Shown piece after piece: positions 4,595 through 62,310 of a DNA stretch of 64,000 nt. The notes beneath the pieces are model-generated. The model searched no databases. It saw only the letters and a program-made list of their open reading frames with translations, and had not been told where the DNA came from. Numbering within the stretch: position 1 is the first letter of the stretch; the number at the start of each line of letters is the position of its first letter. Position numbers and translations under genes: made by a program. The DNA lies in assembly GCA_038087875.1 (NCBI GenBank), contig CM075978.1, positions 178,064,001-178,128,000 on the forward strand. The letters are read 5' to 3'. This DNA comes from Malacoraja senta. Taxonomy: Eukaryota.

Positions 4595-4757
4595 GCAAGG
4601 AACTGCAGGTGCTGTTTATATAAAAGAAAACAAAGTGCTGGAGTAACTCAGTGGGTCGGATAGTCTGAAGAAAGGACTCAACCCGAAACATCACCTATCC
4701 ATGATCTCCAGGGATGTTGCCTGAACTGTTGAGTTACTCCAGCACGTTGTGTCCTTT
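4595..4757. mobile_element. Penelope-derived inverted terminal-repeat unit with degenerate hammerhead motif (4665-4692, +)
   Basis: Inverted arms gtgctggagtaactca / tgagttactccagcac; ctgaagaaaggactcaacccgaaacatc. Confidence 0.8.
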
Positions 4758-5001
4758 AGACCCTGATCCCATTGTTGAAACTGCAGGTGGATGTCTCCAG
4801 CTCCCAATGGATTTCATTCAAGGATCTTAAATCAAGAGGCTTTAGTTTAGTTTCTCCTTTGCACCACCTGATATGCTCATGCATGGTGTGATTCCCGGAT
4901 AACATGCAAAACTTAATTTTTCACTCCAAACTTAATTTTCACTCCACAGATGCTCCTTGAACTCAACAGGTCAAGGAGCATCTGTGGAAGGAGAAGCAAC
5001 T

Positions 5002-5030
5002 AACGTTTCTATCTGAAAACCCGTCATCAG
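5002..5030 (-). ncRNA. Degenerate hammerhead-like motif (CTGATGA variant)
   Basis: rc reads gttCTGATGAcgggttttcagataGAAAcgTTag; helix II is damaged. Confidence 0.5.
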
Positions 5031-5249
5031 AACTGGGAAAACAAGCATTGAAGCTATGATTCACGTACTTCCTCTAGTCTGGTGCAGTGTGTTCAATGCT
5101 CTTGGTGTGGTTCCCTCTCCATTAGCAAAATCAAATGCAGATTGGGGGACCTTTTTGTGGAATATCCTGAGCTCCACTGACCTGCGAGGTTAATTCTCTG
5201 AGTCATTCCACTATTCTGCAGTGTATTTTGCTGCTTTTTACCAAAGAGA

Positions 5250-5689
5250 TAATGACGTGGTTGCTTGAGGCGTATGGCCGCCCGGGGCCGGTCCCACTTA
5301 GAATCGCGGAGGCGTATGGCGTTGTGCAGGGCTGGTCCCACTTAGAATCGCGGAGGCGTATGGCGTTGTCGCGCGCCAACGGCCTGTCGGCACGCAGGCG
5401 CATTGCGGTCGTACGCAGCGTCTTGACGGCGTACGCCTAACGCGTGGCATTGCGCAATGACGTCACCGCCCGGCGTTGCGTTGCGTGATGACGTCACCGC
5501 CCGACGCTGTGCGACGCCCAAATTCAGTCGTCCCGCCTCCTGCCCAGCTGATTGGTGAGTATGACGCAAATTACGTCACGCGCGAACTTAACGCGTACTT
5601 ACCACCTACTTAGCGCGAACTTCGCGTGAACTCCGCTTCCGTTTGGTCGCGCCAAACGCATGCAATCGCATGCAAGTGGGACAGGCCCT
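5250..5689. mobile_element. PIF/Harbinger-type non-autonomous element, left end missing
   Basis: Right TIR gtgggacaggccct followed by TAA; CpG-rich; internal 44-bp tandem duplication; terminus matches the element at 48572. Confidence 0.75.
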
Positions 5690-7569: not shown

Positions 7570-7796
7570 GTGTAGGAAGGAACTGCAGATGCTGGTTTAC
7601 ACTGAAGATAGACACAAAAATGCTGGAGTAACTCAGCGGGACAGGCAGCATCTCTGGAGAGAAGGAATGGAAGACGTTTCGGGTCGAGACCCTTCTTCAG
7701 ATTGACCTCAAATAGGGTCGACCCAAAATGTCACCTATTCCTTCCATCCAGAGATGCTGCCTGTCCTGCTGAGTTTCTCCAGCATTTGTGTTTATC
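7570..7796. mobile_element. Penelope-derived inverted-repeat element with hammerhead motif and 12-bp TSD
   Basis: TSD cccctttgacct at 7558-7569 and 7797-7808; two long inverted arms; intact core on - strand at 7673-7700. Confidence 0.9.
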
Positions 7797-13110: not shown

Positions 13111-13814
13111 CTAGCAAGTGAGGTCAGAAATGGTAGGGAAATGTCGGAAATGGTTCAGGTTTATTTGAATGCCAGATGGAAGTTAGTGGTGAAATGGATG
13201 AAGTCAGTGAGTTGTGTGTGGGTGCAGGAGGTAGCACCAATGCAGTCATCAATGTAGCGGAGGTAGCGTTTGGGGATGGGGCCCTGGTACGCCCCGAACA
13301 AAGATTGTTCGAAGTACCCTACAAAGAGGCAGGCATAGCTGGGGCCCATGCGCGTGCACATAGCTACGCCTTGTATTTGGAGGAAATGGGAGGAGTCAAA
13401 GTTATTAAGGGTAAGGACCAGCTCTGCTAGGGGGATGAGACAGGGATTGGTTGGTTCTGCTATCGCAGGAAATGCTACACTTGTCACTTTACCTCCTCCC
13501 TTGACTCCATTCAAGGACCCAATCAGTCTTTCCAGGTGTAGCAGAGGGTCACCTGCACCTCCTCCAACCTCATCGATTGCATCCGCTGCTCTAGATGTCA
13601 GCTGCTCTTCATCGGTGAGACAAGCGTAGGCTTGGCGATCGCTTCGCCGAACACCTCCGTTCAGTTCGCATTAACCTACCTGATCTCCTGGTGGCTCAGC
13701 ACTTCAACTCCCCCTCCCATTCCGAAACCGACCTTTCAGTCCTGGGCCTCCTCCATGGCCAGAGTGAGGACCACCGTAAATTGGAGGAGCAGCACCTCAT
13801 ATTTCGCTTGGGCA

Positions 13815-14030
13815 GTTTCCCTGCCAGAGGGCAGTGGAGGCCAAATCACTGGATGGATTTAAAGAGAGAGTTAGATAGAGCTCTAGGGGCTAGTGGAATC
13901 AAGGGATATGGGGGAGAAGGCAGGCACGGGTTATTGATTGGGGACGATCAGCCATGATCACAATGAATGGCGGTGCTGGCTCGAAGGGCCGAATGGCCTC
14001 CTCCTGCAGCTATTTTCTATGTTTTCTATG
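13815..14030 (+). mobile_element. CR1 3' tail inserted in the Penelope GIY-YIG end
   Basis: FKRELDRAL...GIKGYG and (tatgtt)n tail; Penelope resumes at tttgcacccagc. Confidence 0.88.
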
Positions 14031-14171
14031 TTTGCACCCCAGCGGTATGAACATTGACCTCTAATTTCAGGTAGTCCCTGCTTTCTCCTCCCCTTCTCAG
14101 GTCTCCCTCAGCCACTGTCTCCGCCTCTTCCTTTCTCCTTCCCGCCACCCCCCCCCCACCCTCACATCAGT

Positions 14172-14199
14172 CTGAAGAAGGGTCTCGACCCGAAACGTT
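14172..14199 (+). ncRNA. Minimal type I hammerhead ribozyme motif in Penelope terminal repeat
   Basis: CTGAAGA-a-gggt ctcg accc-GAAA-cg-TT; palindromic ACGT helix III. Confidence 0.75.
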
Positions 14200-14379
14200 G
14201 CCCATTTCCTTCGCTCCATAGATGCTGCCTCACCCGCTGAGTTTCTCCAGCATTTTTGTCTACCTTCGTATTCTTTGATCTGACTGGATAGCATGAAAAA
14301 CAAAGCTTTTCCTTGTACCTCGGCACACATGTCGATAATAAACCTAAACACAAACTTAATTCCCCTGTTACAGTGCATG

Positions 14380-14600: not shown

Positions 14601-16044
14601 GTTTCCATTGATCTGCAGCTACCCGTCCTTATTTCTCCTGTGCTCGAGTCTGAACCTCAGTTTGTTTCTTCACGTCTGCACACTGAACTGACCATGACTA
14701 ATGTTTGGGAGGCTCCGGCCACCATTGTGAGTGTACTATCAACACCGAGTGTCTTCACTGCTCTCCCATCCAACCCACATTCCAGTGTAATGTAGAATTA
14801 CTCTGCAAGTCGCACGATCTGTAACACAATGTGCAGACTTGTATGCAAGAAGTGCAGACAGCTCTGAAATGTCTGTCTGGTTTATTCAAGATGCACAGGG
14901 GAATACATGCATGACCAAGTACATCAAGCATGATGTCCCACATTTGAATGTACTGTATTATCTATCAGGATACAACATGCTTGCCTTTGATAAAAATAAG
15001 CGAATGATTTGCCCCTCAATTCACATGAGCATTAATTCTTACTAATCGTTTTAACTCAATTTCCTCTAATGGCTTCACTGAAACATTTATTATTTGTTAA
15101 GTATGCATTTGCTGACCCCATTATTCTAATATAACTGCATTTCACTTTGCATTTCACCACTAAAATGCCAAAGATATAGAGACTGACGAATACTCTTTTG
15201 AGAATTGCAAAGTTGTATCAGTCAAGGGTCGTGGAACTGAGAAGCTGCGTCTTGAGTGGTTCATGGAAAACACAGTCCCTTGTTTAATCTAGGGCAACAA
15301 GAAATGGGCAATATGATGTGGCTTCCCAGCATCGCAGTACCACTTTGTCAATGAAATATGTAACCTATGTTTGTGCCTTGGACACATTCTGCTCGTTCCT
15401 GATCCTGGGTGCCTGACTCTGGAACCCATTTTGGATCTCTTTGTCCGGGACCATCTTTGCCACACATATTCCCCATACCCGATCTTGGGCCCGAACTTTG
15501 CAACAGATTTTGCCCACTTGTGACCGTGGGGTCTTAATTCTGGGACATATTCTGGGGTCTTAATTCTGGGACACATCCTGCCCCTCTCGATCCAGTGCCC
15601 TAACGGCAGGATACATCATGCCCCTACTGATTTGACATGCAGAATTACTCTAGTACTTTGTGTTCTTTGCAAGTTTCCAGCATCTCCAGTTTCTTGTGTT
15701 TACAGAAGTGATCACTTGTCAATGTCAATGGCCACCTGCAGTGAAACTGACAGACCACGTTCTTAGGAGACAATGGTGTCCGATTACTGTGGGGAGGTTA
15801 CATGGAAACAGTTTTTTCCCCCAAGACTGTTTTTAATTCCAAGGCAGCTTTCCATTCGCTCGTCAACTTCTAAAGTAACTTTAAAGTGTGTCTCTAGATC
15901 CCAAGTGAAATCATGTTACAACCGATTTGACCTGTATAATGCAATAGTGTTCCCTAATTTATCAATCGCATTATATCCAATTCGCATTGTGGAAATATGG
16001 ATAGTAGCAGAATAATGACTAATTACAGTGTAATGCTCAAGAAA

Positions 16045-20849: not shown

Positions 20850-22800
20850 AAACAGGAGCAGGACTAAGCTATTCTTCTGCTCTATTCAAAGATACCATGG
20901 CTGATTGCAACCTCTCTGTACTCCCATCTACCAGCAGATCTTTTACCATCTTGCTTATACATACGTCAACCTTTAAAATATTCTACTGACCTTTGAGGAA
21001 GAGAGTTCAAAGACTCACGAACATCAGGGGGAAAAAAACATCACCTTAAACAAGCAAACCTTTACTTTTATATAGTTCTAAATTCTCCTTCAAACAGAAA
21101 CCTTGTCAAGACCCTTCAGAATGTTGTTATGTTTCAATCATGTCCGTCTCATTCTTCTTAACTCTAATGGTTACAAACCCAGGCTGTCCAATGTTTCCTC
21201 ATTAAAAAATCCTCCTATTCTTGGTATTAGTTGAGCCAACCTTCTCTAAACTGCTTCCAATAGATTAGCATCTTTCGTTAAAAAAGGAAACTAGGGCAGC
21301 ATGGTGACATGTCAGCACAGTTGATGCCTTGCAGTGCTAGAGACCCGGGTTCGATCTTGACTATGGGTGCTGTCTGTACAGAGTTTGTTCCTTATACCCC
21401 GTGCCCACTTGGGTTTTCTCCGGGTGCTCCAATTTCCTCCTACACTCCAAAGACGTACTGATTCATAGGTTAATTGGCATCAGTAAAATTGTAAATTGTC
21501 CCTAGTGCATTGGATAGTGCTAGTGTACGGAGATTGCTGGTCGGTGCGGACCCGGTGGGCCTAAGGGCCTGTTTGCACGCTGTATCTCTAAACTAAAACC
21601 AAACAAATACTTTCCAAAATACTCCGGATGTTGTCTCATCAATTACCCAATATAACTGAAGCATAACCCTCCCCCTATACATTAATACTTAATTCCTCTT
21701 GCAATAAATAAAACACATTCTGCTAGCTTTGCTAATTATTTACAATACCTGCATTTTAGTCAATTATGAACCATGCGCGATGACACCCTCTGCATCTCAG
21801 AGCTCCGCAGTTTAGCACCCGTTAGACAACATACTTATCACACGTTGTACTGCATTTGCTGCATCTTTGCCCACTCACTTAACCTATCCACGTCCCTTTT
21901 GTAGCATCCTCTGCCCGCTTCATATCTTGCTCTCCCACTTAGCTTTTTGAGTCTTCACCAAATTCAGTGATCGTATCATCAGTGCATTCCTGCAGGTCAT
22001 TTACATACTGTAGGTTGTAAAAAGCCGAGACCCCAGCCCTGATCCCTATGCCACGTCAGTCTTTACATCTTGCCAGTCAGAAAAAACCCGCGGATGCCCC
22101 TTCTGGTTCCAGTTAGTTGCCCATCTTCTCTGTATATTAATATGTTATATGAACTTATATCCTACACCAGGAGCTTTTATTTTCTGCAATAACCTTCAAT
22201 GCTGCACCTCATCAAATAGCTTCTGGAAATCCTAGTACATCCATCAGTTGCCCTTTATCTAGTTACTTCTTCACAGAATACCAATAAATTGATCCAACAT
22301 GATTCCTTTCACAAAATAATTTTGACGTTGTATTTTTATCTTCAAGTTTTCAAAGCGTCTGGCTATAACATCTGTGAATAAGAGCTTCTGACATTTTCCC
22401 TGTGTTAATTGAATTGGCCTGTAGTTTCCTGCTTTATCTCTCCCTCCCTATGCTGAACAAAGATGATACATTTGGCATTTCCCGTCTAACCGTACTTGCT
22501 CCAAATCTAGCTAATTTTGGAAGATTTGGACCACCACATCAACCTTCTCACTTCCCACTTCATTTTGTACCCTTGGATGCAGTCCACAAAGACTGCAGCT
22601 CCAACAATTTGCTCCATACCATTTTCTGGGTGAATGTAATATCGTCAAGTTATGTCCTCCTTCGCAATTCCACACCTACAACAATTTCTCGGATTCTCTA
22701 CAAAGAAGACCGATGTAAAATAGCTGTTCAATTTATGTACATACATTCTATTAGTAATCCCACTGACATACTTTCTATAGGAACTCAACCTGATAAATTG
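20850..22800 (-). mobile_element. Old decayed CR1-type LINE interrupted by a SINE
   Basis: Scattered rc matches to RT motifs (tcaaatagcttctggaaatcc, gtcttcaccaaatt, agaccccagccctgatcccta). Confidence 0.6.
21293..21600 (+). mobile_element. HE1/V-SINE
   Basis: B-box ggttcgatc, V-domain, tail gctgtatctctaaactaaa. Confidence 0.9.
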
Positions 22801-22879
22801 ACGATTCCTTCCCCACCTCCACAGATACTGCTCAACCCGTTATGTTCCTCTAGCAGTTTTCTTCCCCCCAGGGTTTAAG

Positions 22880-23070: not shown

Positions 23071-23074
23071 GTTT

Positions 23075-25000: not shown

Positions 25001-25049
25001 TGTTTGTTCCTTTACAAACCACGGAGAAAATAATTCATCTCATCTCCAG

Positions 25050-26609: not shown

Positions 26610-26737
26610 TATATAGGTGTGATGAGGGAGCATTGAGACAGACTACTAAGTGACGGTGGAAACATAAGTAAAGAAATAAAAATTAGGCAGATGATTCCAA
26701 GTTGGGGCAAGAAGGGAGAAGGATAGAGAAAGAAAAA

Positions 26738-28470
26738 GCACAAAATGCTGGTAGAACCCAGCGGGTCAGCTAGAATTGAAAAGGAACATGGATAGGTGAT
26801 GTTTTGGGTCAGGACCCTTCTTCAGACTGATGGTGTTTTTGGGGGGTGGAAATGAAAGCTGGAGGAGAAGAGAGGTTGGACAAAGCCTGGCAGGTAAGTG
26901 GTGGATACAGGTGTTTTTTTGTGATAGGAAGATGAAAAGACAGGTGTGAGACAAAATGATTGAAGAGATGTGAATTGTGAAGCTAGAGGAAGGAATGTAG
27001 GTAGAAAGCAGAGGTGAGTGGATAAATAGTTAAGGGTCAAGGTGTACACAAGGGAAGTGGCAGAGGGGGTTTGTAGTTACCTAAAATTGGAGACTTCGAT
27101 GTTCATATCATTGTGTTGTAAACTACCCAAGGAGAATACGAGGCGCTGTTCCTCCAGCTTGCAACTGACCTCACTCTGGTAATGGAGGAGGCCATTGGAA
27201 TGGGAACAGTTGTGTTAGCAAGTTTAGCAATTGTTAGTAATTGGGAGATCCAGTAGGACTTGGCGGACCGAGCACAAGTGTTCAGCGAAACTGTCGTCGA
27301 ATCTATGCTTGGACTCACCAATGCAAAGGTGGCCACATGGGGAACACCAGATGCAGTAGGTGAGGTTAGAGGAGGTGCACGTGAACCTGTCTTACCTGGA
27401 AGGACTGCTGTGGTTCCTAGATGGAGGTGAGGCAGGAGGTACAGGGACAAGTGTTGCATCTCCTGTGGTAGCAGTGAAAAGTTCTTGGGGGGGGGGGGCG
27501 ATTTGGGTGGCAAAGAATAAGTGAACCAAGGAGTTGCGGAGTGAGCAGTCTCTGTAGAAGACGGAAAGAGGTGAGGATGCAAAGATGTGACTGTCGATGG
27601 GATCACTTTGGAGGTGGCAGAAATGTCAGAGAATGATGTGTTGGACGTGGAGGCCGGTGGGGTAAAAGGCGAGGACCAGAGGAACTCAATCCTCGTTCCG
27701 TCTGTGGGGAGAGAGAGTGAGAACAGAACAGAGGGACACAGAGGAGACACGGGTGAGGGATCCATCTATGACAGCAGGAGGCAAAACCAGTTCACCGAAG
27801 AAAGAGGATGTCTCAGATATCCTAGAATGGAAAGCTTCATTTTGGATTCAGATGCGGCTTCGATGGAGAAATTGAGAATAGGGGATGGGTCTTTACAGGA
27901 GGCAGGGTGGGAGGGGGTGCTTTCCAAATAACTGTGGGAGTGGCAGGCTTGTCGTGGGCATCATTTGTTAGTCAATCGCCTGTGATGAAGATAGAGAGAT
28001 CAAGAAAGGGAAGAGAGTCCCAACAGGGATTGTCCAACTAAATTTGAGGATAGGGTGGAGGTTAGTGGTAAAGTTAATGAAATCAAACAAATCTGCACAG
28101 GTGCAGGAGGCAATCCTGATGCTGTCATTGATGTAGTGGAGCTGGACTTTGGGATAGTGCCAGTGTACATTTGCAACAAGGACTATTCTACATAACCAAA
28201 AGAGCACAGCTGGGGCCCATGCGAGTGCCCATATGGCTACACCTTTAACTCCAATAAAGTGAGAGGAATTAAAATAAGTTGTTGGAGGTGAGGACAAGTT
28301 CTGCCAGGCAGAGGAGATTGTTAGCGGGTGGAAATTGATGAGGTCTCTGTTCGAGGAAATACCGGTGAGGGATGGAGGTGCAGAGGAACTGAACATCCAT
28401 TCAAGAATAACCGGAGGATGGAGAAGGGATAGACTCAGAGGCTGGGATGATGAGGAGCTTATGGTCATTA
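26738..28470 (-). mobile_element. Decayed Penelope-like element (RT, GIY-YIG, 3' terminal repeat)
   Basis: GVKGVA / HYIND RT remnants (27968..28468); GIY-YIG-like region about 27100-27400; degenerate hammerhead motif about 26797-26825. Confidence 0.88.
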
Positions 28471-30200: not shown

Positions 30201-30340
30201 AGACAAACGTCTGAAGAAGGGTTTTGGTCCGAAACGTTGCCTATTTCCTTCGCTCCATAGATGCTGCCACACCCGCTGAGTTTCTCCAGCACTTTTGTCT
30301 ACCTTCGATTTTCCAGCATCTGCAGTTCCTTCTTAAACAC
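30201..30340 (+). mobile_element. Solo Penelope terminal-repeat insertion with hammerhead motif and 14-bp TSD
   Basis: TSD ttaaagcagcaggt at 30187-30200 and 30341-30354; CTGAAGA...GAAAcgTT at 30211-30238. Confidence 0.9.
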
Positions 30341-31694: not shown

Positions 31695-31788
31695 GGACAC
31701 AAAAAGCTGGAGTAACTCAGCGGGTTAGGCAGCATTCTGGGAGAAAAGGAATAGGTGACATTTTGGGTCGAGACCCTTCTTCAGACTT
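31695..31788 (-). mobile_element. Penelope terminal-repeat arm with mutated hammerhead motif
   Basis: gctggagtaactcagcggg...gacattttgggtcgagacccttcttcagact. Confidence 0.8.
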
Positions 31789-36810: not shown

Positions 36811-36812
36811 TA

Positions 36813-37085
36813 GTTTAAGGTGAGAGGAGAAAATTTTGACAGGAACCAGATAGGAAACTTTTTCGCACAGAGCGTGGTGAGTATATAGAACGAGCTGCCA
36901 GACGCGGCAGTTGAGGCAAAATACTATAACAACATTTAAAAGACATTTGGATAGATACATGGATATAAAGGTTTAGAGGGATATGTGCCAAACTCAGGCA
37001 GGTGGGACTAGTGTGGATGGGGCACCTTGGTCAGTAAGGGCAAGTTGGGCTTGTTTCCGCATTGTCTGACTCTTATAACTCAATG
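36813..37085 (+). mobile_element. CR1 3' tail
   Basis: gtttaaggtgagaggag...aacgagctgccaga...gcaggtgggacta. Confidence 0.85.
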
Positions 37086-37429
37086 ACTCGGGCAACATTT
37101 GTCGAGCGAAATGGGCAGTTGATATTTTGGGTATGGACTCTGCTTCAGACTGAAAAGGTATCCTGTATCAAAGCAGTGTGGTCCAGACTTGGATAAGCAT
37201 AGCAGGTATTAAACTTCCAGGTGGTTTACTACCTTTGATTTCTGATGAGATACTTAATGGTTGTAAACATTCAGTGATGATGAATATACTGGGCATGTAC
37301 ATTACACAGGTTCAGCACTCTAAAAGGCATGGTTATGAAGTTCTGCCCATACATTAAGATGAAAAAAGCAGAATTCCTGCAATACTTTAAAGGGGCGTCA
37401 AAGGCCATCCAGCCATCTGCTGCCTGTGT

Positions 37430-38995: not shown

Positions 38996-40430
38996 AGATC
39001 CAAAGATGTGGCTTTAACCGTGTTCCTAACTCCCTTCCTGCCGCCTTCCTCCTCCCCTTCCTCAGCCTCCGCACTGAGCAACTCCTCATCCTCATTGAAA
39101 CATTTTTAAAAAGCTACAGCTGAAGGAATTTTGAAATAAAAGCAGAAAGTGCTGAAGGTTTTCAGCAGATCTGGCAGCATCTGTGGAAAGAGAAATGGAG
39201 ATAACATTTCAGGTTAAAACCCCCACAGAACCAAGTGGTGCTACAACTCAGTGACTTGATATTACAGGTCACTAGTTGTGTACTAGAAGTTTCATCTCTG
39301 ACCAGCATAAACCTGGTGCTTATTACCTTTGTCCATCTCCCAATTAGACAAGGAACATATTGCACTAATTTAGATACAGATACATAGACAATAGGTGCAG
39401 GAGTGGGCCATTCGGCTCTTCGAGCCAGCACCGCCATTCAATGTAATCATGGCTGATCATCCACAATCAGTACCCCGTTCCTGCCTTCTCCCCATATCCC
39501 TTGATTCCGCTATCTTTAAAAGCTCTAACTCTCTTTTGAATGCATCCAGTGAATCGGCCTCCACTGCCTTCTGAGGCAGAGAATTCCACAAATTCACATC
39601 TCTCTATGTGAAAAGGGTTTTCCTCATCTCAGTTCTAAATGGCCTGCCCCTTATTCTTAAACTGTGGCCCCTGGATCTGGAATCCCCCAACATCGGGACA
39701 TGTTTCCAGGGCTGTCAACTTTGGGTGAGAGTTGAAAGTGAGAAATTGTGAGGGAGCGTATTGACCAAGGGGGGGAGGGGGGTGTCCCCCTCCCACGGTA
39801 GGGAGCTTCTCCATTTTTCAGCTTGAAATTGTGCAATCTGGTGCATACTGTAGCGAGTCTTTTAATTTAAACTTGAATGCAGCATTTATGCTTCAAATTG
39901 GATTAGGTATGAATAAGGTTAGGCTAAATTACATTCCTAATTTTATTCCACAGTAGAGCCAGGCTCTGATCAACAGGTGCAGCACATGAATGACCTTAGT
40001 ATGTTCATGTATGGAAATCAGATTATAATTCATGATGTTATGCATATATATAGAGAAACAAAAACATAGAAACAAGGCAAGAGGAGTCAGACTTCCATCA
40101 CTGTTCTGCACAAATAAATTAATCAACCTTACCCTTTGACTATAGAAACAAGACGAAAATAATGCCACATATTCAACCGTATATGGTTCAATTAAATTAA
40201 GATATATATGTAAAACATATATATGGAAACAGGCCCTTCGGCCCACCAAGTCCACACCGACCAGCAATCTACCATACACCAGTTGTATCCTACACGCCAG
40301 GGACAATTTACAGAAGCCAATTAACCTACAAACCTGCACTTCTTTCGGATGTGGGGGAAACCAGAATATCCAGAGGAAACTATGTGGTCATAAGGAGAAT
40401 GTACAAATACTGTACAGACAGCACCCTTAA

Positions 40431-42454: not shown

Positions 42455-42585
42455 TCAGTCTGAAGGTCTCGACCCGAAACATCACCTATTCTTTCTCTCC
42501 AGAGATGCTGCCTGTCCTGCTGAGTTATTCCAGCTATTCGTGTCTATCTTCAGTTTAAACCACCATCTGCAGTTCCTTCCTACAC
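42455..42585 (+). mobile_element. Penelope terminal-repeat arm, hammerhead core partly deleted
   Basis: cagtctgaaggtctcgacccgaaacatcacc...ctgcagttccttcctacac. Confidence 0.82.
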
Positions 42586-44371
42586 TCTTTGTTAAGCGAA
42601 ACAGGTCCTATTCTCATAACATTATTCACCTCAACTAAGTATTTTCTTCACCTCCGTTGCTGCAGAGAATACAATCCCAGTTATCAAATCTTTCTTCAAA
42701 GTGAAAAAAAAATCCCAACCCTGCCAATATGTTCATAAATCGCCCCTGGATCCTCTCCAGAGCAATTGCACCCTTTCTACAATGTGTCATAGTCTTACAG
42801 CATGGAAACTGGCCCTTCATCCCAACTTGTCCATGCAGATCAAGATGCCCCATCTAAACTAGCCCCATTTATCCGCATTTGGCCCATATCCCTTTGTGCG
42901 TGCCAGTGTGTGTGTAAGGGTGTGTGCTAGGTTGTGTGTGAGAGTGTGTGTGAGAGTGTGTGTCAGTGAAGCGGCGACAACACCCGGAGTGAGCAGAGAC
43001 TTGGTGATGTCCGGGGGAGCGTTTCCCTGCACCCCCTCCCCGGGAATGCGGGCCGGCTCAGGTGCTCTGTGTCCAGCTGGGGTCTGGGGGAGGTGAGGGC
43101 CAGTGACCTGGGAGTCGGGCATCGGAGCGGAGCTATAGCCTGAGATTCATCCCCGCGGCACCGGAGGCGGCACCGACGCCCCCACTCACGCGGTCCGCTC
43201 CTGGCTCCGGGCTGGGGTTAAAACTCCATGCGGTGTGGACAGAGCGGCCGACGGACACAGAGCTGCCAGAGGTGATGGTGGGAGGTGTGAGCGGTGCCTC
43301 AGTGGGGGAGGGGAGGGGGGGGGGATTCGGTGCTGGGACCACCGCCATGTCTCACTGAGACGTAGATGCTACCTCACCCGCTGAGTTTCTCCAGCATTTT
43401 TGTCTACATTGCCATTTTAAATAGTGTGTGATGGGCGTGAGCCATTGCTCGTTTTTTACGGGAAACCCGCCGACAGAAAACTATTCTCATTGGTGAATGT
43501 GGAGGAATGTGACTTTATTTATTTATTCATACATGGTTTTAAAAATATTTTTTTGAGCATGAGAACTTCTGTCATCAGCGTGAGAGCGTGAGAATTTTGT
43601 CAAATGCGTGAGTCTCACACTCAATTCGTGAGAGTTGGCAGCCCTGTGTTTCCTGCATCTAGCGTGTCAAATCCCTTAATGATTTTATATGTCTCTATAA
43701 GATCCCCTCTTATCCTTCTAAATTCCAGTGAATACAAGCCCAGCCACTCCATTCTTTCATAAAATGACAGTCCCGCCATCCTGGGAATTAACCTCGTGAA
43801 CCTACGCTGCACTCCCTCAATAGCAAGGATGTCCTTACTCAAATTAGGAGACCAAAACTGCACACAATACTCCAGGTGTGGTCTCACCAGAGTCCTGAAC
43901 AACTGCAGAACTCTTTGCTGCTATACTCAATTCCTCTCGTTATGAAGGCCAGCATGCCATTAGCTTTCTTCACTGCCTGCTGTACCTGCATGCTTACTTT
44001 CAGTGACTGATGTACAAGGACCCCCAGATCTTGTTACACCTCCCCTTTTCCTAACCTGACACCATTCAGATAATAAACTGCCTTCCTGTTTTTGCCACCA
44101 AAGTGGATAACGTCACAATGATCCACATTATACTGCATCTGCCATGCATCTGCTCACTCACCCAACTTGTCCAAGTCACCCTGCATCCTCATAGCATCCT
44201 CTTCACAGTTCACACTGCCTGCCAGCTTTGTGTCATCTGCAAATTTGCTAATGTTACTTTTAATTCTTTCATCTAAATCATTAATGTATAGTGTAAATAG
44301 CTGCGGTCCCAGCTCCGAGCCTTGCGACACCCCACTAGTCACTGCCTGCCATTCTGAAAGGGACCCGTTAA

Positions 44372-44801: not shown

Positions 44802-45539
44802 TACTCTTTGTTTCCTGTCTGCCAACCAATTTTCTATCCATGTCAATACCCTACCCCCAATGCCATGTGCTCTAATTTTGTCCACTAATCTCCTGTGTGG
44901 GGCCTTATCAAAGGCTTTCTGAAAGTCCAGAATTTGTTGTGCTTATATCTATTTGAAACGTCTTTAACCTGAAACATTGAATCTGTTTCTCTTTTCACTA
45001 ATGCTGCTTGATCCGCAAAGCAGTTTCTACTTTTATTCCTCATCTTGTTTGATTTCAGTTTGCTGAGCTCCCTTGCAATGGGACCATCCCTGCCTCAGCA
45101 CTGCTTTCTATAGTCTCGCCTAAGGATCCATCTACATAATGACTGCCAAGGTTTTTACCAGCAATGCCACCACATCCATGTCGAGGACTTGCACCTCCAC
45201 CTCATTAGGAGCTTTTTGAATAGCAGCAGATTGGATCTGTACACTTTAACATTGACGTGTAATAGGGGGTGTATCGAATAAAATATGACATCAAAGCACA
45301 GAAGAATTTTTAAAAATAAAAGCTTGGTTAAAAACATAATTTTTAAAGAGTAACCTAAAGGAGACATGAAATAGATGCAGACAATGCTGGAAACCCTCAG
45401 CAGGTCAGGCAGCATCTGTGGAGTGAGAAACAGAGTTAACTATTTCAGGGCATTGACCCTTCTCCACGTATATTTCTAGTTCTGGTGAAGGGTTATTGAC
45501 CCTATCTATTGACTGTTCTCTCTATTGACAATCTATACA

Positions 45540-45840: not shown

Positions 45841-46529
45841 CTAATGCCTGACCTGCTGAGTGTTCCCAGCATTCTTGGGAGGGCATTCTTAACTAATGCC
45901 TGACCTGCTGAGTGTTCCCAGCATTCTTGGACATTATTTCAGGTTTCCAGAATCCACGGTTTGGGTAATGAGGAGAGGAGGCAGGAGAGGGATCTGGCTG
46001 GCCAATATTAAGGTGAATGTCACTGATGCTTAAGAGACATCCGGGGATTCCCGAGGGATCAAGCTGGAACAGATAACAGAAATGGGGTCACGGTGGATTT
46101 GAGGAATTGAAAATCTGGGGATTGTCAATGAAGGGTTGTCAGAACAGAAGGGAGGAGTGAATTCAACGGAACTAACCATGAAATGAGCTAGGATGAAATG
46201 ATTTAGTCTGAGTTAATAATTAATGCAACATATGGCTTATTAAAAAGCTTCACCTAGAAGCTTAAAGGGAGAGAACCCTCCAACATGGTAAATCTCTGCA
46301 ACCATATAGTGGCAAATATACTCTCTGCACAGTTCTGGTCTCCTATTACAATAAATAACCAAATATGATTAGCAAGATTAAAAGAGGTGATATAATGATC
46401 AGGAGAGACTATTACAGGGTCAGGCTACATTCCCTCAGAGGGAAGAGACTGAGGAGTGATTTTTGCAGCAGTGATAAAAATTATGAGGCAGTTTGCAAGG
46501 GTGATTGATTGATTGATTGACTGATTGAT

Positions 46530-48264: not shown

Positions 48265-48398
48265 TGTCTGAAGAAGGGTCTCGACCCGAAACTTTACCCA
48301 TTCCTTCTCTACAGAAATTCTGCCTGTCCCGCTGAGTTACTCCAGCATTTTGTGTCTATCTTCGGTTTAAACCAGTATCTGCAGTTCCTTCCGACACA
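48265..48398 (+). mobile_element. Penelope terminal-repeat arm with hammerhead motif (helix III mutated)
   Basis: gtCTGAAGAagggtctcgacccGAAActttacc...ctgcagttccttcc. Confidence 0.85.
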
Positions 48399-49234: not shown

Positions 49235-50324
49235 TAACCAGGAGAATTATTAAAACTAACGTTTTTTGCTGAAAGCCAGAACATTCTACCAACAGCAGTG
49301 GCTAATACAATGTTGCATCACACATAGTTCTTAAAGGTACATATACACACACTGGATATAATTAGCCATGTTTGATACTCAGATTATTGTGTGGGGTTCA
49401 GGTAAGGATAGAATTGCTAACAAACTAAACATCCTGCATAGTTTAATTAGAAAGAGTACAGGATGGAGAAACACATGAACACTGCGAGTAAAAAGGAATA
49501 AAGTATGATCCAAGATAAGTTCCAGAGTCTCGAGAAATGCTAAATCAAGAGGGACCTTGTAGATTAATCCTAAACATTAATGCTTGAAGTAAACGTTATT
49601 CCAGATGACTGCTTCAAAGAGCAGGAGATACACATAGACATTCAGTAGAATAAAATTGAGCAACTTGGAATGACGTTGACAAAAATCTACCCGGTGTCTC
49701 ATGATAAATGTTTGGAACACTTTACTTAGCAAAGAACAGAAAGAAAACTCAGATAATTGAAACGTGAGCTTGGATGGTGAGTCCGGGTCGGCTGTTTGGT
49801 TTCTGAATGTAATCTCTGGGAGAATCTAAAAGCAGAGGGTAAGGCATTTTGGATAGATGCCCTTACCGCAGAACAGAAATCACATTATCTCTGAAAGACA
49901 ATTAACTAGCAATGGTGATTCTATTTTCCTCACCACAGATGTTGCCTGACCCCATGGATTAGCATTTCTAGCATTCCCTGTTTTTAGTTCAGGTTTCCAG
50001 CATCCTCCATACTGTGCTGTTGGAACCACTTCTGTCCTCCTGCAATGTCCACAGGGCAACATTAGTCTCATTGGGTATTAATTGATTGCAGAAATGCTGG
50101 CCTATATTTCTTCTCCCTACTCATGGCACTGAGGTCAATAACTCAATATCAACCTGATTCTACAATTGGCCAACCGTATTGACTGGAGTCCTTCCTAACC
50201 AATAGAATTTATTTTTAAGTCACAGGAAGACATTTGAAATAGAGGTAAGAGTAGGTCCTTCAACCAGGCAAGCCCACGTCATTATTTACTGCTCCACTCT
50301 CCTATCTCCATCAATGCCCAAGAC

Positions 50325-55964: not shown

Positions 55965-55969
55965 CTTGC

Positions 55970-56400: not shown

Positions 56401-57212
56401 GACTCGATAACAATGCAGACTGCACTGACATGATCATATCATATTAATGGACACAATTTCAAAGACTGAAGCTTGACTAAGAAACTCACTTGTACAAGAA
56501 CCTTGACATAGTTCAAAACAATTTCCAGTTTTGCAAATGGCTGTCCTTCGGAAAGATCGATTGCCTTGCACTGATGACCCAAGAATAGCGTGCTGCTCAC
56601 ATTTGTCAGCTTTTAGCATACCAAGTGAAGACAACTGCCAGAATCGTCTGAAAGATGGTAGCGTATAATCCACACAAGGCAGTGACTATTCCTTCAATTG
56701 TCTAGTGATAGTACACGTCTTGCATCACTACTGTAACTACTTGGCTTCAATGTCCAGCATTGGAAAGTCCTTACTTTGATATCAAAAATGTTTTAATGAT
56801 TTTCCTCTTGCCTCTGAAACATTGATTCTAACCCAGCCAATACTGCAACTACCCTCTCCTCGAGAATCTGATCTGAAGTTAGTTTGCAGCAATTCCTATC
56901 CATGCAGCTGAAAATAAAACAATTGCAGATGGTGGAGTCTGAAATACAAAACAGAAAGCGGTGAAAACACACAGCAGGTTAGGCATTATCTGTGGAGAAA
57001 GAGAAACAGAGGATGTTTCATGTTGAAGATCTGCTGTTGAAAAAAAAATCTGTTATTATGTCTTTTGCATCACCAACAAATGCTTGATAAAGCATTTCCA
57101 AGAAAGGTCTTCAAACTGAAACTCACAACAAATGCTGCCTGACACTGAGTATTTCCAGGATAGACACAAAAAGCTGGAGTGGATCAGACAGCATTTTTGG
57201 AGAAAAAGAAAA

Positions 57213-57246
57213 AGTGACGTTTCGGGTCGAGACCCTTCTTCAGACT
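57213..57246 (-). ncRNA. Best-preserved minimal hammerhead ribozyme motif
   Basis: rc: agt-CTGAAGA-a-gggt ctcg accc-GAAA-cg-TC-act; 3-bp helix I, helix II, ACGT palindrome, GUC triplet. Confidence 0.8.
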
Positions 57247-57499
57247 GAGTCAGGTGGAAGGGAAACAGTCGGTGATATAGAACAAATGAATGAAAGATAT
57301 GAGGAACTGCCTCTACCTGAGATGAGGCTGAACAAATACTGATCTCTCTTTGCAACTTGGCAATATCTGATTGAGGTCCAGACTTAGCTTACTTCCATCT
57401 TAGTGGATTTTTACCACTTGGTGAACCAGAAGGGTTGAAGAATAAGACTTCATTATTTGAACACTTGATGAGAAAAGGGGAGAAAGGAATTTGTGTAAG

Positions 57500-60090: not shown

Positions 60091-60734
60091 AAAAAACGAT
60101 CGAGTGAGTAAGTCATTAAGTTATTTTTCAAATTGTTTATTATATGATATACTCATTGTGCAGGGAAGGTTTTGATTGATTTCTCTGAATAATCAGTAAT
60201 AACGTAACATTTTGGATGGCGTAACTAGGCCTTGGGAAACCACAACTCTTCTCAGTCAGTCCGAAAAGAATTGCTTGAGTTTAAATCAACAGAATTCTGC
60301 AGGGACAAACTTTCTCTCTGGATTGGAAGATTGAGTGCAGAAAATAAATTAAATAAAATGAGGTGAAGAGAAGGCACCATTTTTCATTCCATATGAGGCT
60401 CGTGCAAGTTGTCGCAATTCAAGTGAATGGCTCCAATCATACCTGTTGCTCTGGTATGTTTCATCTTGATGCAGAAAAAGGTATCTGATGATTCATACTA
60501 AACCTTGCCTTGCCTAGTTTTACCTCAATCTGCCTCTGGAGAGATTGAAGGAACTCAATTGCAAACGGCACGCATACCCAGTTTAGGTCACAATATTAGT
60601 GTTACTCTCCTGGGTTATCTGATCATAGAGCAGTGAGTCACTTCCCATAATAATTCCCTTAGATGATTCCTGGGACTGGCAGACAGCTTCTGGAGGTATC
60701 TGTGCCAAACCTACACTGCAGCAAAACTGTCTAG

Positions 60735-61010
60735 AGTCATAGTCATAAGTGTGGAAACAAGCCCTTTGGCCCAAATTGCCCACGTCGACCAACGTGTCCT
60801 ATTTCACGTCCCACTTACCTGTGTTTGGCTCATATCCCTTTAAACCTGTTCTATCCATGTACCTGTCTAATTGCTTCTTAAACATTGTGATAGTGCCTGC
60901 CTCAACTACCTCCACTGGCAGCTTGTTCCATACACCCACAACTCTTTGTGTGAAAAAGTTACCCCTCAGATTCCTATAAAATCTTACCCCCATCACCTTA
61001 AACCTATGCC
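60735..61010 (-). mobile_element. CR1 3' tail
   Basis: NLRGNFFTQRVVGVWNKLP. Confidence 0.9.
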
Positions 61011-61829
61011 AACTGGGAAAAACTTAGCAGGCCAGATAGTATCTTTGGAGAGAAATGGATGGATGAAGAAGGGTCCCAACCCAAAATGTTGCCTGTCCAT
61101 TTTCCCCCACAGATGCTGCTTGATCTGCTGAGTTCCTCCAGCATTTTATTATCTGCAGTTCTTTTTATCTTTCTACACTCGTCCATGAGCAAGAGCCACC
61201 CACACACAAGCTTGTGCCGAACAGGTTGCAGCAAAACCAGAACTTGTACTGCACAAGGGGTGGAAAAAAAATAATGAGCACTAAACAAGAACCACTGGAG
61301 CCACAAACGCATAAGAAACAACTTAATTTGAGCAGCATTTGATGTATTTTACGATGCCTCAAGCATAGGTGAATATTTTGGTAGACTTTGAAGAACCACT
61401 GATCTGTGTTCTGGACAGTTCAGAGATTCACTTACTATTAAGATTGAACGGTGCTGAGTGTGAGATGACGACTGATCCACTGTCTGCACATTTTTGCAGT
61501 GAAAACCCCTTGGCACAAGCGATAGAAAAAACAGATTAATGGCACATTTCAGCAGCTGCTCTGCTGAATGTAAAGCACTCCCATTTCCTCTGGGTCATAT
61601 TAAGGAATGTGTTCCTTGGCAGGGACCCTTTCCGCTAACTGATGGCTTTGTTCATTGTTTGCTTATGCGCCTGTGAAATGTTGTGACTGTTCAAAACTAC
61701 AACACGAGTGAACAAAAGGAAGAAAAAGCCAAGACAACAGGAGCTGGAACAGCCCAGTCATAATGGACTCTGTCCAGCAATATCTAGAACCACTTGAAAG
61801 TCTGAGAGTCTTTTCCCGAGTCCCATATT

Positions 61830-62310
61830 TGTCTTTTATTCCCCCTCTTTCCACTCCCACCTGTCCCCTTCCACCCCTTTTACATTTCACTCCTCCTCCC
61901 TTTTCCATATTCAACACCCTTTTGTCTCCTTTCCAGCTCTAGTCTTTGTCACTTACTCCACCCATCTTCTTCGTGCGTATGGCGTACACAGCCTGAATTT
62001 GCAAGACAACTTGTTCTGTTTGATCTTCTGTTTGTGCACGCCAGGTTAATTGTATTCGTCGAAACAGGGTGGACTACGTGAAGGTTGCAATCTCCCACCC
62101 CACTCCATCCATCAGCCAATTTTACTGTCCTCCTCACCTGTATCTACCTATCACTTGCCAGTCTCTGCATCGTCCACACTTCACTTCCAGCATTCTCCCC
62201 CCCCCCCTATTCCATCAGTCTGAAGGAGGATCTCCACCTGAAATATAGTCTGTCCATTCTCTCCACGGATGCTGTCTGACCACTCCGCTGAGTCCCTCCA
62301 ACACTTTGTT
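61830..62310 (+). mobile_element. Decayed Penelope 3' region/terminal repeat
   Basis: Pyrimidine-rich UTR like the rc of 26830-27060; cagtctgaaggaggatctccacctgaaat. Confidence 0.7.
61967..62101 (-). mobile_element. 135-bp retroposon with (GAA)n tail and 12-bp TSD
   Basis: actccacccatc (61955-61966) / actccatccatc (62102-62113); rc ends cacgaagaa. Confidence 0.7.

What the first reader, a model, noticed from the sequence alone, without database searches (positions are those of the whole stretch)
4595..62310. Dispersed family of minimal hammerhead ribozyme motifs on short non-coding Penelope-derived units
Seen: CTGA(A/T)GA - hairpin (gggt-ctcg-accc and variants) - GAAA-CG-TH, intact or decayed, at about 4665(+), 5002(-), 7673(-), 14172(+), 26797(-), 30211(+), 31757(-), 37120(-), 42460(+), 48268(+), 57213(-), 61063(+) and 62220(+), almost always next to the same roughly 100-nt arm. 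At 14172 and 26797 it lies directly downstream of Penelope GIY-YIG coding sequence. Known: this is the hammerhead catalytic core, and PLE terminal repeats carry minimal type I hammerheads whose very short palindromic helix III is thought to need dimerisation. Inference: most copies here have no coding sequence, so the ribozyme-bearing unit looks like an abundant retrozyme- or SINE-like family mobilised by Penelope RT/endonuclease, at roughly one copy per 5 kb. I cannot confirm this is undescribed in chondrichthyans.
Basis: partly seen in the sequence, partly recalled or inferred. Interest (0 to 1): 0.85.

Follow-up and report, generated by a model that had tools for sequence, protein, structure and literature searches.

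The report
Penelope retrotransposon ends carrying minimal hammerheads
The window is peppered with short (about 100 or 135 nt) end-pieces of Penelope-like retrotransposons that carry a minimal hammerhead ribozyme motif; the pattern is real and shows how these elements insert, but this kind of element is already described in other animals.

Summary
A 95-136 nt unit starts with a minimal type I hammerhead: CUGAAGA, an extra A, GGGU-CUCG-ACCC, GAAA, CG, then U and C or U. It occurs 27 times (3.9% of the window). All 13 listed sites are real and I found about 14 more. Four copies keep the full descriptor (14172+, 30211+, 57243-, 7700-), against none in 200 shuffles. Most other copies are dead, largely through CpG decay.

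The units are products of Penelope-like element (PLE) integration:
- They lie sense-strand, 115-265 nt after RT/GIY-YIG coding remnants, at 14172 and 26828.
- Their 3' ends fall at two sites 38-40 nt apart, matching the PLE "tail".
- Several form head-to-head pairs with the tail on one arm only.
- Two insertions have perfect 12 and 14 bp target-site duplications.

The 5' ends cluster at (A)GUCUGAAG, so these are not random truncations. The non-CpG core is better conserved than the rest (96% vs 79%).

An independent retrozyme or SINE lineage is not shown. Short copies group with coding-linked copies, there is no pol III head, and no tandem array lies in the window. PolyA RNA-seq of a sister species shows no cleavage ends.

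The kind is known (Cervera and de la Peña 2014; Frangieh 2024; Li 2026 preprint). First-stage readers of this scan flagged the same family in many other windows of this genome.

The parts
14169..14271 (+). HHR unit linked to PLE coding sequence. The min-HHR is intact (core starts 14172, predicted cleavage after GUU at about 14199). The 3' end is of the short class.
   Evidence: upstream EN remnant
13458..14168 (+). 5'-truncated PLE arm. It holds a GIY-YIG endonuclease remnant (aa ~790-925 of ~920-aa homologues, frameshifted), interrupted by an unrelated ~215-bp repeat at 13817-14033. The stop (..SNFR*) follows, then a ~115-nt pyrimidine-rich 3' UTR ending ..CAUCAG.
13125..13487 (-). Inverted PLE arm: RT core remnant (aa ~488-616, YIDD motif), head-to-head with the + arm.
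26735..28400 (-). 5'-truncated PLE copy. It runs from the RT core to the EN end (aa ~468-925, decayed), then ~265 nt of 3' UTR, then the HHR unit 26828-26735 (core dead: G12 to A, ACGU to ACAU). The 3' end is of the short class.
30201..30340 (+). Single mini-insertion: an 8-nt filler plus the unit from GUCUGAAG to ..AAACAC (with tail). It is flanked by a perfect 14-bp TSD TTAAAGCAGCAGGT (30187-30200 and 30341-30354). The HHR descriptor is met with two G-U pairs in helix II.
7570..7796 (.). Head-to-head pair inserted as one event. The left arm (-, 7703 to 7570) is complete, with an intact HHR and the tail. An 11-nt spacer follows. The right arm (+, 7710-7796) starts in helix II and lacks the tail. 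A perfect 12-bp TSD CCCCTTTGACCT flanks the pair (7558-7569 and 7797-7808).
4591..4756 (.). Head-to-head pair. The left arm (-) covers unit positions 44-131, with tail. The right arm (+, 4662-4756) covers positions 2-96, without tail, and its core is decayed. No clear TSD.
4937..5031 (-). Decayed copy whose distal half is a 17-bp-arm snap-back palindrome.
48266..48397 (+). Near-consensus full unit with tail. Helix III is broken (ACGU to ACUU).
42457..42585 (+). Full unit with tail. A 4-nt deletion removes part of the core.
31686..31787 (-). Short-class unit starting at AGUCUGAAG. G12 to A and ACGU to AUGU (CpG decay).
37075..37151 (-). Decayed unit.
56920..57247 (.). Cluster of three copies. 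The unit 57247-57129(-) has an intact HHR and ~20 nt of PLE 3' UTR upstream. It lies tail-to-tail with an inverted partial copy 57101-57158(+). An older copy sits at 57030-56920(-).
61016..61179 (.). Head-to-head pair. The left arm (-) covers positions 31-80. The right arm (+, 61064-61179) covers positions 6-133 with tail. Core dead.
62135..62314 (+). Unit with ~85 nt of PLE 3' UTR upstream (5' truncation inside the UTR). Core decayed.
43362..43409 (+). 5'-truncated arm (positions 50-98), 96% identical to the 14169 copy.
39112..39222 (-). Old decayed unit.
45373..45466 (-). Old decayed unit.
22779..22865 (+). Old decayed unit.
62652..62725 (+). Decayed unit.
15633..15697 (+). Arm-only fragment (positions 62-127).
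45843..45961 (+). Two partial arm fragments in a local duplication.
49926..50007 (+). Arm-only fragment (positions 41-117).
44960..45021 (+). Decayed fragment.

Best explanation
The repeat is the terminal cis-acting module of Penelope-like retrotransposons (canonical PLEs with a C-terminal GIY-YIG endonuclease) in a skate genome. The module holds a minimal type I hammerhead followed by about 65-105 nt. That stretch contains the region where the PLE reverse transcriptase starts cDNA synthesis, at either of two sites 38-40 nt apart. These two sites explain the 'short' (~97 nt) and 'tailed' (~133-136 nt) 3' ends.

Every PLE insertion ends with this module. Most copies here are mini-insertions made by the PLE RT/endonuclease. 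In these, the cDNA ran only from an initiation site back to an RNA 5' end lying 2-3 nt before the hammerhead core, at (A)GUCUGAAG. When both nicked DNA strands were extended, the result was a head-to-head pair with the tail on one side, bounded by a target-site duplication.

Shown here: the motif; its PLE linkage and strand; the two 3' end classes; the clustered 5' end; the head-to-head pairs; two perfect TSDs; and excess conservation of core nucleotides.

Inferred:
- The 3' ends are RT initiation sites, by analogy with the Anolis PLE biochemistry.
- The sharp 5' end is an RNA 5' end. The sequence UCAGUC there looks like an initiator, and the upstream pyrimidine tract plus CAG also looks like a splice acceptor.
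- The hammerhead cleaves after GUC or GUU only as a dimer and/or with protein help.
- Genomic copies are dead on arrival and decay fast, because G12 and the helix III CG sit in CpGs.
For: Motif and chance.

Unit and copies.

PLE coding:
- The RT piece has 1882 homologues. The full-length ones are ~920 aa with RVT_1 plus a C-terminal GIY-YIG domain.
- tblastn maps RT and EN remnants at 13125-13640 and 27095-28400 on the same strand as the adjacent hammerhead.
- The LI(Y)C..C..(Y)IGET..RRL..EH motif is readable.

3' ends: 8 copies end at unit position 94-98 and 6 end at 131-136. The published PLE hallmark is an optional 30-40 bp tail on one side, corresponding to two RT start sites (PMC8557442; PMC11167929).

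Head-to-head pairs with a one-sided tail: 7570-7796, 4591-4756 and 61016-61179. The coding copy at 13125-14271 is head-to-head too. The Anolis PLE cleaves and extends both strands in vitro (PMC11167929).

TSDs: 14 bp and 12 bp perfect, against a maximum score of 9 in ~400 random controls.

5' ends:
- At least 7 copies start at position 2-3.
- Dozens of independent DNA contigs from two species join a unit 3' end of either class exactly to GUCUGAAG.

Conservation: the non-CpG core is 96.4% identical to consensus against 78.8% for the rest (p=7e-10). On the same 10 copies it is 99% against 83% (p=2e-6).

Shared lineage: short copies 30209 (88.6%) and 43362 (95.8%) are the closest relatives of the coding-linked 14169 copy.
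Against: - No full-length PLE lies in the window, so I could not check that the arm after the hammerhead equals the element's 5' leader. I also could not check that a promoter lies upstream.
- Helix I is at most 2 bp and shows no covariation.
- Thermodynamic folding prefers an alternative pairing of GAAGAAGG with the downstream CCUUCU tract. In the homodimer it prefers an intermolecular helix II duplex over the hammerhead.
- Rfam hammerhead models do not match.
- PolyA RNA-seq of a sister species shows reads in both orientations at equal depth, 94% of them running into unrelated sequence. No pile-up of ends appears at the unit start or at the cleavage site.
- Only 2 of about 18 insertions show a clear TSD.
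- Recurrent head-to-tail junctions in contigs would also fit a tandem, retrozyme-like life cycle.
Confidence: 0.75

Rival explanations
1. The 98 or 136-nt unit is an independent non-autonomous lineage, a mini non-LTR retrozyme. Tandem copies would be transcribed. Dimeric hammerheads would cut out unit-length RNAs, which would circularise and be copied by PLE RT in trans, giving dispersed monomers and tandem arrays.
For: - The unit has sharp, reproducible 5' and 3' ends.
- TSD-flanked units contain no coding sequence.
- Head-to-tail joints recur in 30-58 contigs per DNA data set in two species. The joints are CUACAC|GUCUGAAG and short-end|GUCUGAAG, including a 98-nt 'goes back' joint.
- A preprint reports non-LTR retrozymes of 51-972 bp in vertebrates, derived from PLE pLTRs (10.64898/2026.07.22.740005).
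- Non-coding units outnumber coding fragments by about 8 to 1 in the window.
Against: - The window holds no tandem array.
- Short copies share subfamily-diagnostic sites with coding-linked copies rather than forming their own group.
- A circle cut at GUC|ACC would not by itself create a DNA boundary at GUCUGAAG.
- The RNA run shows no excess of back-joints over what already exists as DNA, and no strand bias.
- The hammerhead is the minimal PLE type, not the canonical loop-loop type I of described animal retrozymes.
Confidence: 0.2
2. The short copies are ordinary random 5' truncations of long PLE insertions, and the apparent unit is only the part that all truncations share.
For: - PLEs are known for heavy 5' truncation (PMC8557442).
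- The window does contain truncations at other points: aa 468, 488 and 790, 85 nt and 20 nt upstream of the core, and unit positions 31-62.
Against: - At least 7 of ~27 copies begin within a 2-nt window at the 5' edge of the core. One of them is proven by a 14-bp TSD.
- Contig joints from two species all land on the same base.
Confidence: 0.04
3. The hammerhead-like block is conserved for a reason other than RNA self-cleavage, for example as part of the RT or endonuclease recognition site or of a promoter-proximal element. On this reading it does not cleave in vivo.
For: - In the Anolis PLE, hammerhead mutants do not affect insertion in vitro. No RNA-seq reads start or end at the cut site there, and cleavage needs the protein (PMC11167929).
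- Here, no read ends appear at the site.
- Helix I is at most 2 bp.
- The MFE folds are not hammerheads.
- A second, non-ribozyme block (CCGCUGAGUU, unit 66-75) is equally conserved.
Against: All 11 core nucleotides, G10.1-C11.1, the extra nucleotide after A9, the palindromic helix III and a non-G at position 17 are present together. That combination was never found in 200 shuffles. It is exactly the published PLE min-HHR consensus, members of which cleave weakly as dimers (PMC4209133; PMC6765202 citing Lünse et al.).
Confidence: 0.15

Closest known systems
Minimal hammerhead ribozymes (min-HHR) in the pLTRs of Penelope-like elements (Cervera and de la Peña 2014, PMC4209133; Lünse, Weinberg and Breaker 2016/17, cited in PMC6765202)
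   Same: - Type I topology and the core CUGANGA...GAAA.
- An unpaired nucleotide between A9 and G10.1, and a G10.1-C11.1 pair.
- A 1-bp helix III with a palindromic CG, implying dimers.
- Sense-strand position next to the RT/GIY-YIG ORF.
- Most genomic copies are single dispersed motifs, or pairs on opposite strands 100-700 bp apart or closer.
   Different: - Helix II is 4 bp here, against 6-8 bp in the schistosome and fly examples.
- Helix I is at most 2 bp, like the D. virilis variant.
- The host is a skate, and that paper does not mention chondrichthyans.
- Cleavage was not tested here.
Poseidon PLE of Anolis carolinensis (PAc): internal initiation of reverse transcription and the 'tail' (Frangieh et al. 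2024, PMC11167929)
   Same: - The hammerhead is followed within ~100 nt by two alternative cDNA start sites, whose spacing equals the optional 30-40 bp tail.
- Both DNA strands are cut and extended, which explains the head-to-head copies.
- cDNA length follows the RNA 5' end.
   Different: - In PAc the ORF starts inside the hammerhead. Here the relation of the unit to the ORF start is unknown, because no full-length copy is in the window.
- The initiation sites here lie ~65 and ~103 nt after the cut site, against ~85-92 nt in PAc.
- The biochemistry was not done for the skate element.
Animal non-LTR retrozymes (Cervera and de la Peña 2020, PMC7229834; Li, Clavereau and Pollet 2026 preprint, 10.64898/2026.07.22.740005)
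   Same: - Short non-coding hammerhead-bearing repeats related to PLE pLTRs.
- Monomers are dispersed.
- Head-to-tail junctions exist in the genome (contig evidence).
- The size lies within the reported 51-972 bp range.
   Different: - Retrozymes are defined by tandem arrays and abundant circRNAs, with canonical type I hammerheads.
- Here there is no tandem array in the window and no circRNA evidence.
- The hammerhead is the minimal type, and many copies are inverted pairs.
Schistosome Sm-alpha / Sj-alpha SINE-like hammerhead elements
   Same: A short, abundant, non-coding retroposon that carries a hammerhead.
   Different: Those elements have a pol III promoter and a canonical hammerhead. This unit has no tRNA-like head or A/B boxes and no A-rich tail.

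Membership tests
PLE-type minimal hammerhead ribozyme | Conserved core C3 U4 G5 A6 N7 G8 A9 ... G12 A13 A14 ... U16.1 H17 | tested here: met
   The family consensus and 4 copies carry all positions. The pattern gives 8 hits against 0.69 expected.
PLE-type minimal hammerhead ribozyme | Helix II of at least 4 bp closed by a short loop, starting with G10.1-C11.1, with one unpaired nucleotide between A9 and G10.1 | tested here: met
   A-GGGU-CUCG-ACCC. About 80% of cells are paired across 20 copies, with no compensatory changes.
PLE-type minimal hammerhead ribozyme | Helix III reduced to A15.1-U16.1 with palindromic 15.2/16.2 (dimer-forming) | tested here: met
   ACGU is in the consensus. CG is kept in 5 of 20 copies, and most of the rest show UG or CA as expected from CpG decay.
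PLE-type minimal hammerhead ribozyme | Helix I of about 4-6 bp between the sequence before C3 and the sequence after the cut site | tested here: not met
   Only U2.1-A/G1.1 and G2.2-C1.2 can pair, and the third pair is A-C. The 3' strand varies among subfamilies while AGU stays fixed. A 2-bp helix I is reported for the D. virilis variant (PMC4209133).
PLE-type minimal hammerhead ribozyme | Located in the non-coding repeat flanking a PLE RT/GIY-YIG ORF, on the sense strand | tested here: met
PLE-type minimal hammerhead ribozyme | Self-cleavage after H17 | tested here: inconclusive
   No pile-up of read ends in polyA RNA-seq of a sister species, with 6% of the run sampled.
Rfam Hammerhead_1 / Hammerhead_3 and related models | Score at or near the gathering threshold of a hammerhead covariance model | tested here: not met
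   No hit at gathering score on the window, nor at E<=10 on 14100-14300. This is expected, because the models require a helix III hairpin.
Penelope-like element insertions | ORF with telomerase-like RT and C-terminal GIY-YIG endonuclease | tested here: met
   Decayed fragments lie at 13125-13830 and 27095-28400. Homologues of ~920 aa carry RVT_1 plus GIY-YIG.
Penelope-like element insertions | Optional 30-40 bp tail, often on one side only | tested here: met
   3' ends fall at unit position 94-98 or 131-136. The pairs 7570-7796 and 4591-4756 have the tail on one arm only.
Penelope-like element insertions | Inverted 5'-truncated partner copy, and 5' truncation | tested here: met
   Head-to-head pairs occur at 4591-4756, 7570-7796, 13125-14271 and 61016-61179.
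Penelope-like element insertions | Target-site duplication of variable length | tested here: met
   12 bp and 14 bp perfect TSDs, against a control maximum of 9. The other copies show none that is clear.
Non-LTR retrozyme | Tandem repeats with one hammerhead per unit | tested here: inconclusive
   There are none in the window. Head-to-tail junctions recur in DNA contigs of two species.
Non-LTR retrozyme | Unit-length circular RNA | tested here: inconclusive
   The RNA run shows 5 reads with a head-to-tail joint that also exists as DNA, and none for the other two joints.
SINE | Pol III promoter head derived from tRNA, 7SL or 5S | tested here: not met
   ARAGORN finds 0 tRNA-like genes. There is no Rfam hit.

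The most novel reading that the evidence does not exclude
The 98 or 136-nt unit is a self-sustaining mini-retrozyme. It would be among the smallest hammerhead-bearing mobile units in a vertebrate. It would have a precise transcription start 2-3 nt before the ribozyme and tandem or circular RNA intermediates. It would have out-multiplied its Penelope parent to become one of the most abundant repeats of skate genomes.
Probability: 0.15. Interest if true: 0.5.

Novelty: new member of a known kind. Interest (0 to 1): 0.3.

Why it matters
This is a clean natural record of how Penelope-like elements integrate. It shows two alternative cDNA start sites, priming from both DNA strands, and mini-insertions with exact ends. 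These agree with recent test-tube results from a lizard element and extend them to cartilaginous fish. For annotation, these units (about 4% of this window, and noted across the genome by this scan's first-stage readers) should be labelled as PLE terminal modules rather than as a new class. It does not open a new question about ribozymes. Whether the minimal hammerhead does anything in the PLE life cycle stays unanswered.

Tried and rejected
- **Rfam scans** gave no hammerhead hit, only chance lncRNA and ctRNA matches. This is uninformative, because the models need a helix III hairpin.
- **Pfam on the broken ORF pieces** found nothing. I replaced it with a homologue search plus Pfam on full-length homologues.
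- **Contigs encoding the ~920-aa homologues**. These came from metagenome assemblies of other hosts. They hold neither this unit nor a CTGANGA...GAAA motif near the ORF ends, so they could not serve as a full-length reference.
- **Covariation counts** for helices I, II and III and for two arm stems. The values were no better than shuffles, because the copies are decaying neutrally. This says nothing for or against the fold.
- **Thermodynamic folds** of the monomer, the homodimer and the tandem dimer. None gave the hammerhead as the MFE structure.
- **First four runs laid** (X1, X2, X6, X7). They behaved like DNA contigs, with unique stretches covered at low even depth and X1 flagged as probably DNA. 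I used them only for junctions.
- **The one raw-read RNA run.** It is polyA-selected and from a sister species.
- **Random 5' truncation** was considered and rejected (see rivals).
- **A B-box reading of GGUCUCGACCC** was considered by eye and dropped, because it needs an indel and there is no A box.
- **TSD search.** It failed for 16 of 18 insertions.


Full report

Yes. The relaxed core pattern CTGAWGA-N(8-30)-GAAAC occurs 8 times against 0.69 expected from dinucleotide shuffles.

A profile built from the best copies and iterated once finds 27 copies or fragments at E<1e-4. Together they cover 2471 nt, or 3.9% of the window, about one per 2.4 kb.

The family consensus reads CAGT-CTGAAGA-A-GGGT-CTCG-ACCC-GAAA-CG-T-C, then ACCTATTCCTTCTCTCCACAGATGCTGCCTGACCCGCTGAGTTTCTCCAGCATTTTGTGTCTATC. 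In some copies it continues with TTCAGTTTTCCAGCATCTGCAGTTCCTTCCTACAC.

I scanned with a strict descriptor:
- the core, with one optional extra nucleotide;
- a helix II of at least 4 bp beginning G10.1-C11.1;
- GAAA;
- self-complementary 15.2/16.2;
- U16.1 and a non-G at position 17.

It is met at 14172(+), 57243(-), 7700(-) and, with two G-U pairs, 30211(+). It was never met in 200 shuffles.

The assembly gap at 55820-55964 is more than 950 nt from the nearest clear copies (E<1e-4), at 49926-50007 and 56920-57030. A marginal fragment (E=0.33) lies at 54355-54379. Nothing here depends on continuity across the gap.

**2. Is it a hammerhead?**

Rfam's hammerhead models do not hit, at gathering score or at E<=10. 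They require a helix III hairpin, which this motif lacks by design.

The proper comparison is the minimal hammerhead described for Penelope-like elements (PMC4209133). That paper lists four non-random features:
- a conserved G10.1-C11.1 pair;
- palindromic 15.2-16.2;
- location in the PLE flanking repeats.

All four are present here.

The weak point is helix I. Only two pairs can form (U2.1 with A or G at 1.1, G2.2 with C1.2). The 3' strand differs among subfamilies while the 5' AGU never changes. The same paper reports a 2-bp helix I for the D. virilis variant.

Pair counts on 20 copies show about 80% pairing in register, but no covariation beyond shuffles. That is expected for neutrally decaying copies and is not informative.

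Minimum-energy folding does not give the hammerhead. It pairs GAAGAAGG with the downstream CCUUCU tract. In the homodimer it makes an intermolecular helix II duplex instead.

So membership rests on the motif and its context. Activity is untested.

**3. Conservation**

Across the copies, the non-CpG core positions are 96.4% identical to the consensus. Non-CpG positions of the arm are 78.8% identical (Fisher p=7e-10). For the ten copies that span both regions the figures are 99% and 83% (p=2e-6).

The counts are not phylogenetically independent. The contrast mostly reflects subfamily differences. These concentrate just after the cut site (positions 32-60) and spare the core, which is what selection on source elements would give.

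CpG positions are only 63% conserved. G12 and the helix III CG both lie in CpGs. Accordingly, most dead copies read CCCAAAA, AUGU or ACAU.

**4. Link to Penelope-like elements**

The 117-aa ORF on the minus strand at 13161-13514 (YLRYIDDC...) has 1882 homologues. The full-length ones are about 920 aa and carry RVT_1 plus a C-terminal GIY-YIG domain.

Mapping two of them back onto the window by tblastn gives three coding remnants:
- an RT core on the minus strand at 13487-13125;
- the start of the endonuclease on the plus strand from 13458;
- a continuous RT-to-endonuclease remnant on the minus strand at 28400-27095.

The endonuclease motif (FTCTSSNLI-C..C...-IGET-RRLGDRFAEH...) and the ORF end (..SNFR*) are readable in both copies.

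The hammerhead follows on the same strand. It lies about 115 nt after the stop at 14172 and about 265 nt after the stop at 26828. 'Directly downstream' is therefore close but not exact.

The 14172 copy carries an unrelated ~215-bp repeat nested in the endonuclease 3' end, at 13817-14033.

**5. Ends of the unit**

The 3' ends fall into two classes. Eight copies end at unit position 94-98 (..TTTTGTGTCTATC). Six end at 131-136 (..CCTACAC). The two classes are 38-40 nt apart.

This is the optional 30-40 bp 'tail', a hallmark of PLE insertions (PMC8557442). In the Anolis PLE the tail corresponds to two adjacent internal start sites of reverse transcription, about 90 nt downstream of the hammerhead cut site (PMC11167929).

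The 5' ends are not random. At least seven copies begin at position 2-3, (A)GTCTGAAG, with unrelated sequence upstream: 4662, 7703, 30209, 31787, 37151, 42457 and 48266.

Other copies extend into the PLE 3' UTR or the coding region: 14169, 26828, 62217 and 57247. About ten copies are truncated inside the arm.

**6. Evidence of insertion**

The unit at 30201-30340 is flanked by a perfect 14-bp duplication, TTAAAGCAGCAGGT. It has 8 extra nucleotides at its 5' junction.

The head-to-head pair at 7570-7796 is flanked by a perfect 12-bp duplication, CCCCTTTGACCT. Its left arm has the tail and its right arm does not. About 400 random control pairs never scored above 9.

Further head-to-head pairs lie at 4591-4756 and 61016-61179. 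The coding copy at 13125-14271 is head-to-head as well.

An inverted 5'-truncated partner and a one-sided tail are published PLE features. The Anolis enzyme cuts and extends both DNA strands in vitro, which would produce exactly such pairs.

**7. Evidence from public reads**

Contigs from three DNA data sets were laid on the stretch spanning 42420-48430 (42420-48410, 42440-48430). They represent two species, one identical to the window in unique stretches and one about 5% diverged.

They show recurrent joints that fuse a unit 3' end exactly to the G of GTCTGAAG:
- 42585 to 48266, which is CCTACAC|GTCTGAAG, in 47-58 contigs per set;
- 43407 to 48266, which is the short end|GTCTGAAG, in 30-46 contigs;
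- 48363 back to 48266, a 98-nt period, in 38 contigs.

They also show loose ends of low agreement right after the short 3' end (48363).

This supports exact unit termini genome-wide. It also shows that head-to-tail copies exist elsewhere, although the window has none.

Summed contig depth over the unit bins is about 10^5-fold that of unique bins. The tool warns that this is not a copy number.

The only raw-read RNA run is polyA RNA-seq of the diverged species, with 6% of the run sampled. It gives:
- equal depth in both orientations;
- 94% of reads running on into unlike sequence;
- no place where molecules begin or end.

Among reads crossing the unit start, the commonest upstream sequence is the PLE 3' UTR (agreement 0.38).

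There is thus no sign of a dedicated unit-length transcript, of cleavage ends or of circles. A polyA library of unknown tissue is a weak test. The same negative result was reported for Anolis.

**8. Interpretation**

The unit is the terminal cis-acting module of the skate's PLEs: the hammerhead plus the region where RT starts. The many non-coding copies are mini-insertions made by the PLE enzyme.

The sequence there, TCAGTC, looks like an initiator. The conserved pyrimidine tract plus CAG just upstream also looks like a splice acceptor. In D. virilis Penelope an intron ends at the 5' edge of helix I. I could not decide between these two readings, and both are inference.

If the start lies there, RT that binds the first initiation site of its own transcript would copy only ~95-135 nt. 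That would explain the excess of mini-copies without a separate master element.

Subfamily sharing supports this. The TSD-flanked mini-copy 30209 (88.6% identical) and the fragment 43362 (95.8%) are the closest relatives of the coding-linked 14169. Copies 4662 and 62652 share the TATCCATG variant with the coding-linked 26828.

An independent retrozyme-like lineage remains possible, at about 0.2, because head-to-tail junctions exist.

A SINE reading fails. There is no tRNA-like head, no Rfam match and no A-rich tail.

**9. Novelty**

- Minimal hammerheads in PLE repeats, mostly seen as dispersed single motifs from truncated PLEs or as close pairs on opposite strands, were described in 2014. That work covered fishes, coelacanth, frog and reptiles.
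- Dimer-dependent cleavage was shown by Lünse et al. (cited).
- The tail and the RT start sites were explained in 2024.
- A 2026 preprint argues that vertebrate non-LTR retrozymes, with one chondrichthyan sampled, derive from PLE pLTRs.
- I found no paper that names skates together with PLE hammerheads.

This is therefore a new member of a known kind.

First-stage readers of this scan have noted the same family in many other windows of this genome. 452 notes hold both words 'hammerhead' and 'Penelope'. Those are unchecked first readings. Of them I tested here only the claims of inverted pairs and of 10-16 bp TSDs, and found both to hold for some copies.

Noticed in passing
window 13817-14033; also 20313-20472(-), 23640-23853(+), 38640-38821(-), 39382-39583(-), 53872-54054(-), 47640-47716(-), 6346-6408(-): A second abundant repeat of ~200 bp, unrelated to the hammerhead unit. 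One copy is nested inside the 3' end of the PLE endonuclease coding remnant. The copy at 39382-39583 lies collinear with a decayed hammerhead unit at 39112-39222, at the same spacing as at 13817-14256. This may mean that a PLE lineage carrying the nested repeat was itself copied, or that the locus was duplicated.
   Followed up: partly
window 7704-7709 and its surroundings (spacer of the head-to-head pair): The ~11-nt spacer between the two arms (GACCTCAAATA, preceded by TT) contains TTGACCT, a third partial copy of the 12-bp target-site duplication. This suggests that each arm was primed at its own nick of the same target.
   Followed up: no
window 44373-44800: Many DNA contigs and RNA reads from both species skip 428-431 nt here (joints 44372 to 44801). 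This copy of another high-copy repeat family therefore carries a nested ~428-bp insertion, or the family has a common deletion variant.
   Followed up: no
window 4937-5031: A decayed hammerhead unit whose distal part is a perfect 17-bp-arm palindrome (CCACAGATGCTCCTTGA ... TCAAGGAGCATCTGTGG). It looks like a snap-back during cDNA synthesis rather than the normal arm.
   Followed up: partly
window 57101-57247: Two units joined tail-to-tail (3' end to 3' end). This is the opposite of the usual head-to-head arrangement.
   Followed up: partly
unit positions 48-59 with 80-91 or 106-116 (e.g. window 48313-48324 with 48345-48356 or 48371-48381): The arm segment CACAGATGCTG can pair with either of two downstream CCAGCAT(T/C)T.. 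segments. Each of the two 3' end classes lies shortly after one of them. These may be alternative hairpins that mark the two RT start sites. They show no covariation in the window.
   Followed up: partly
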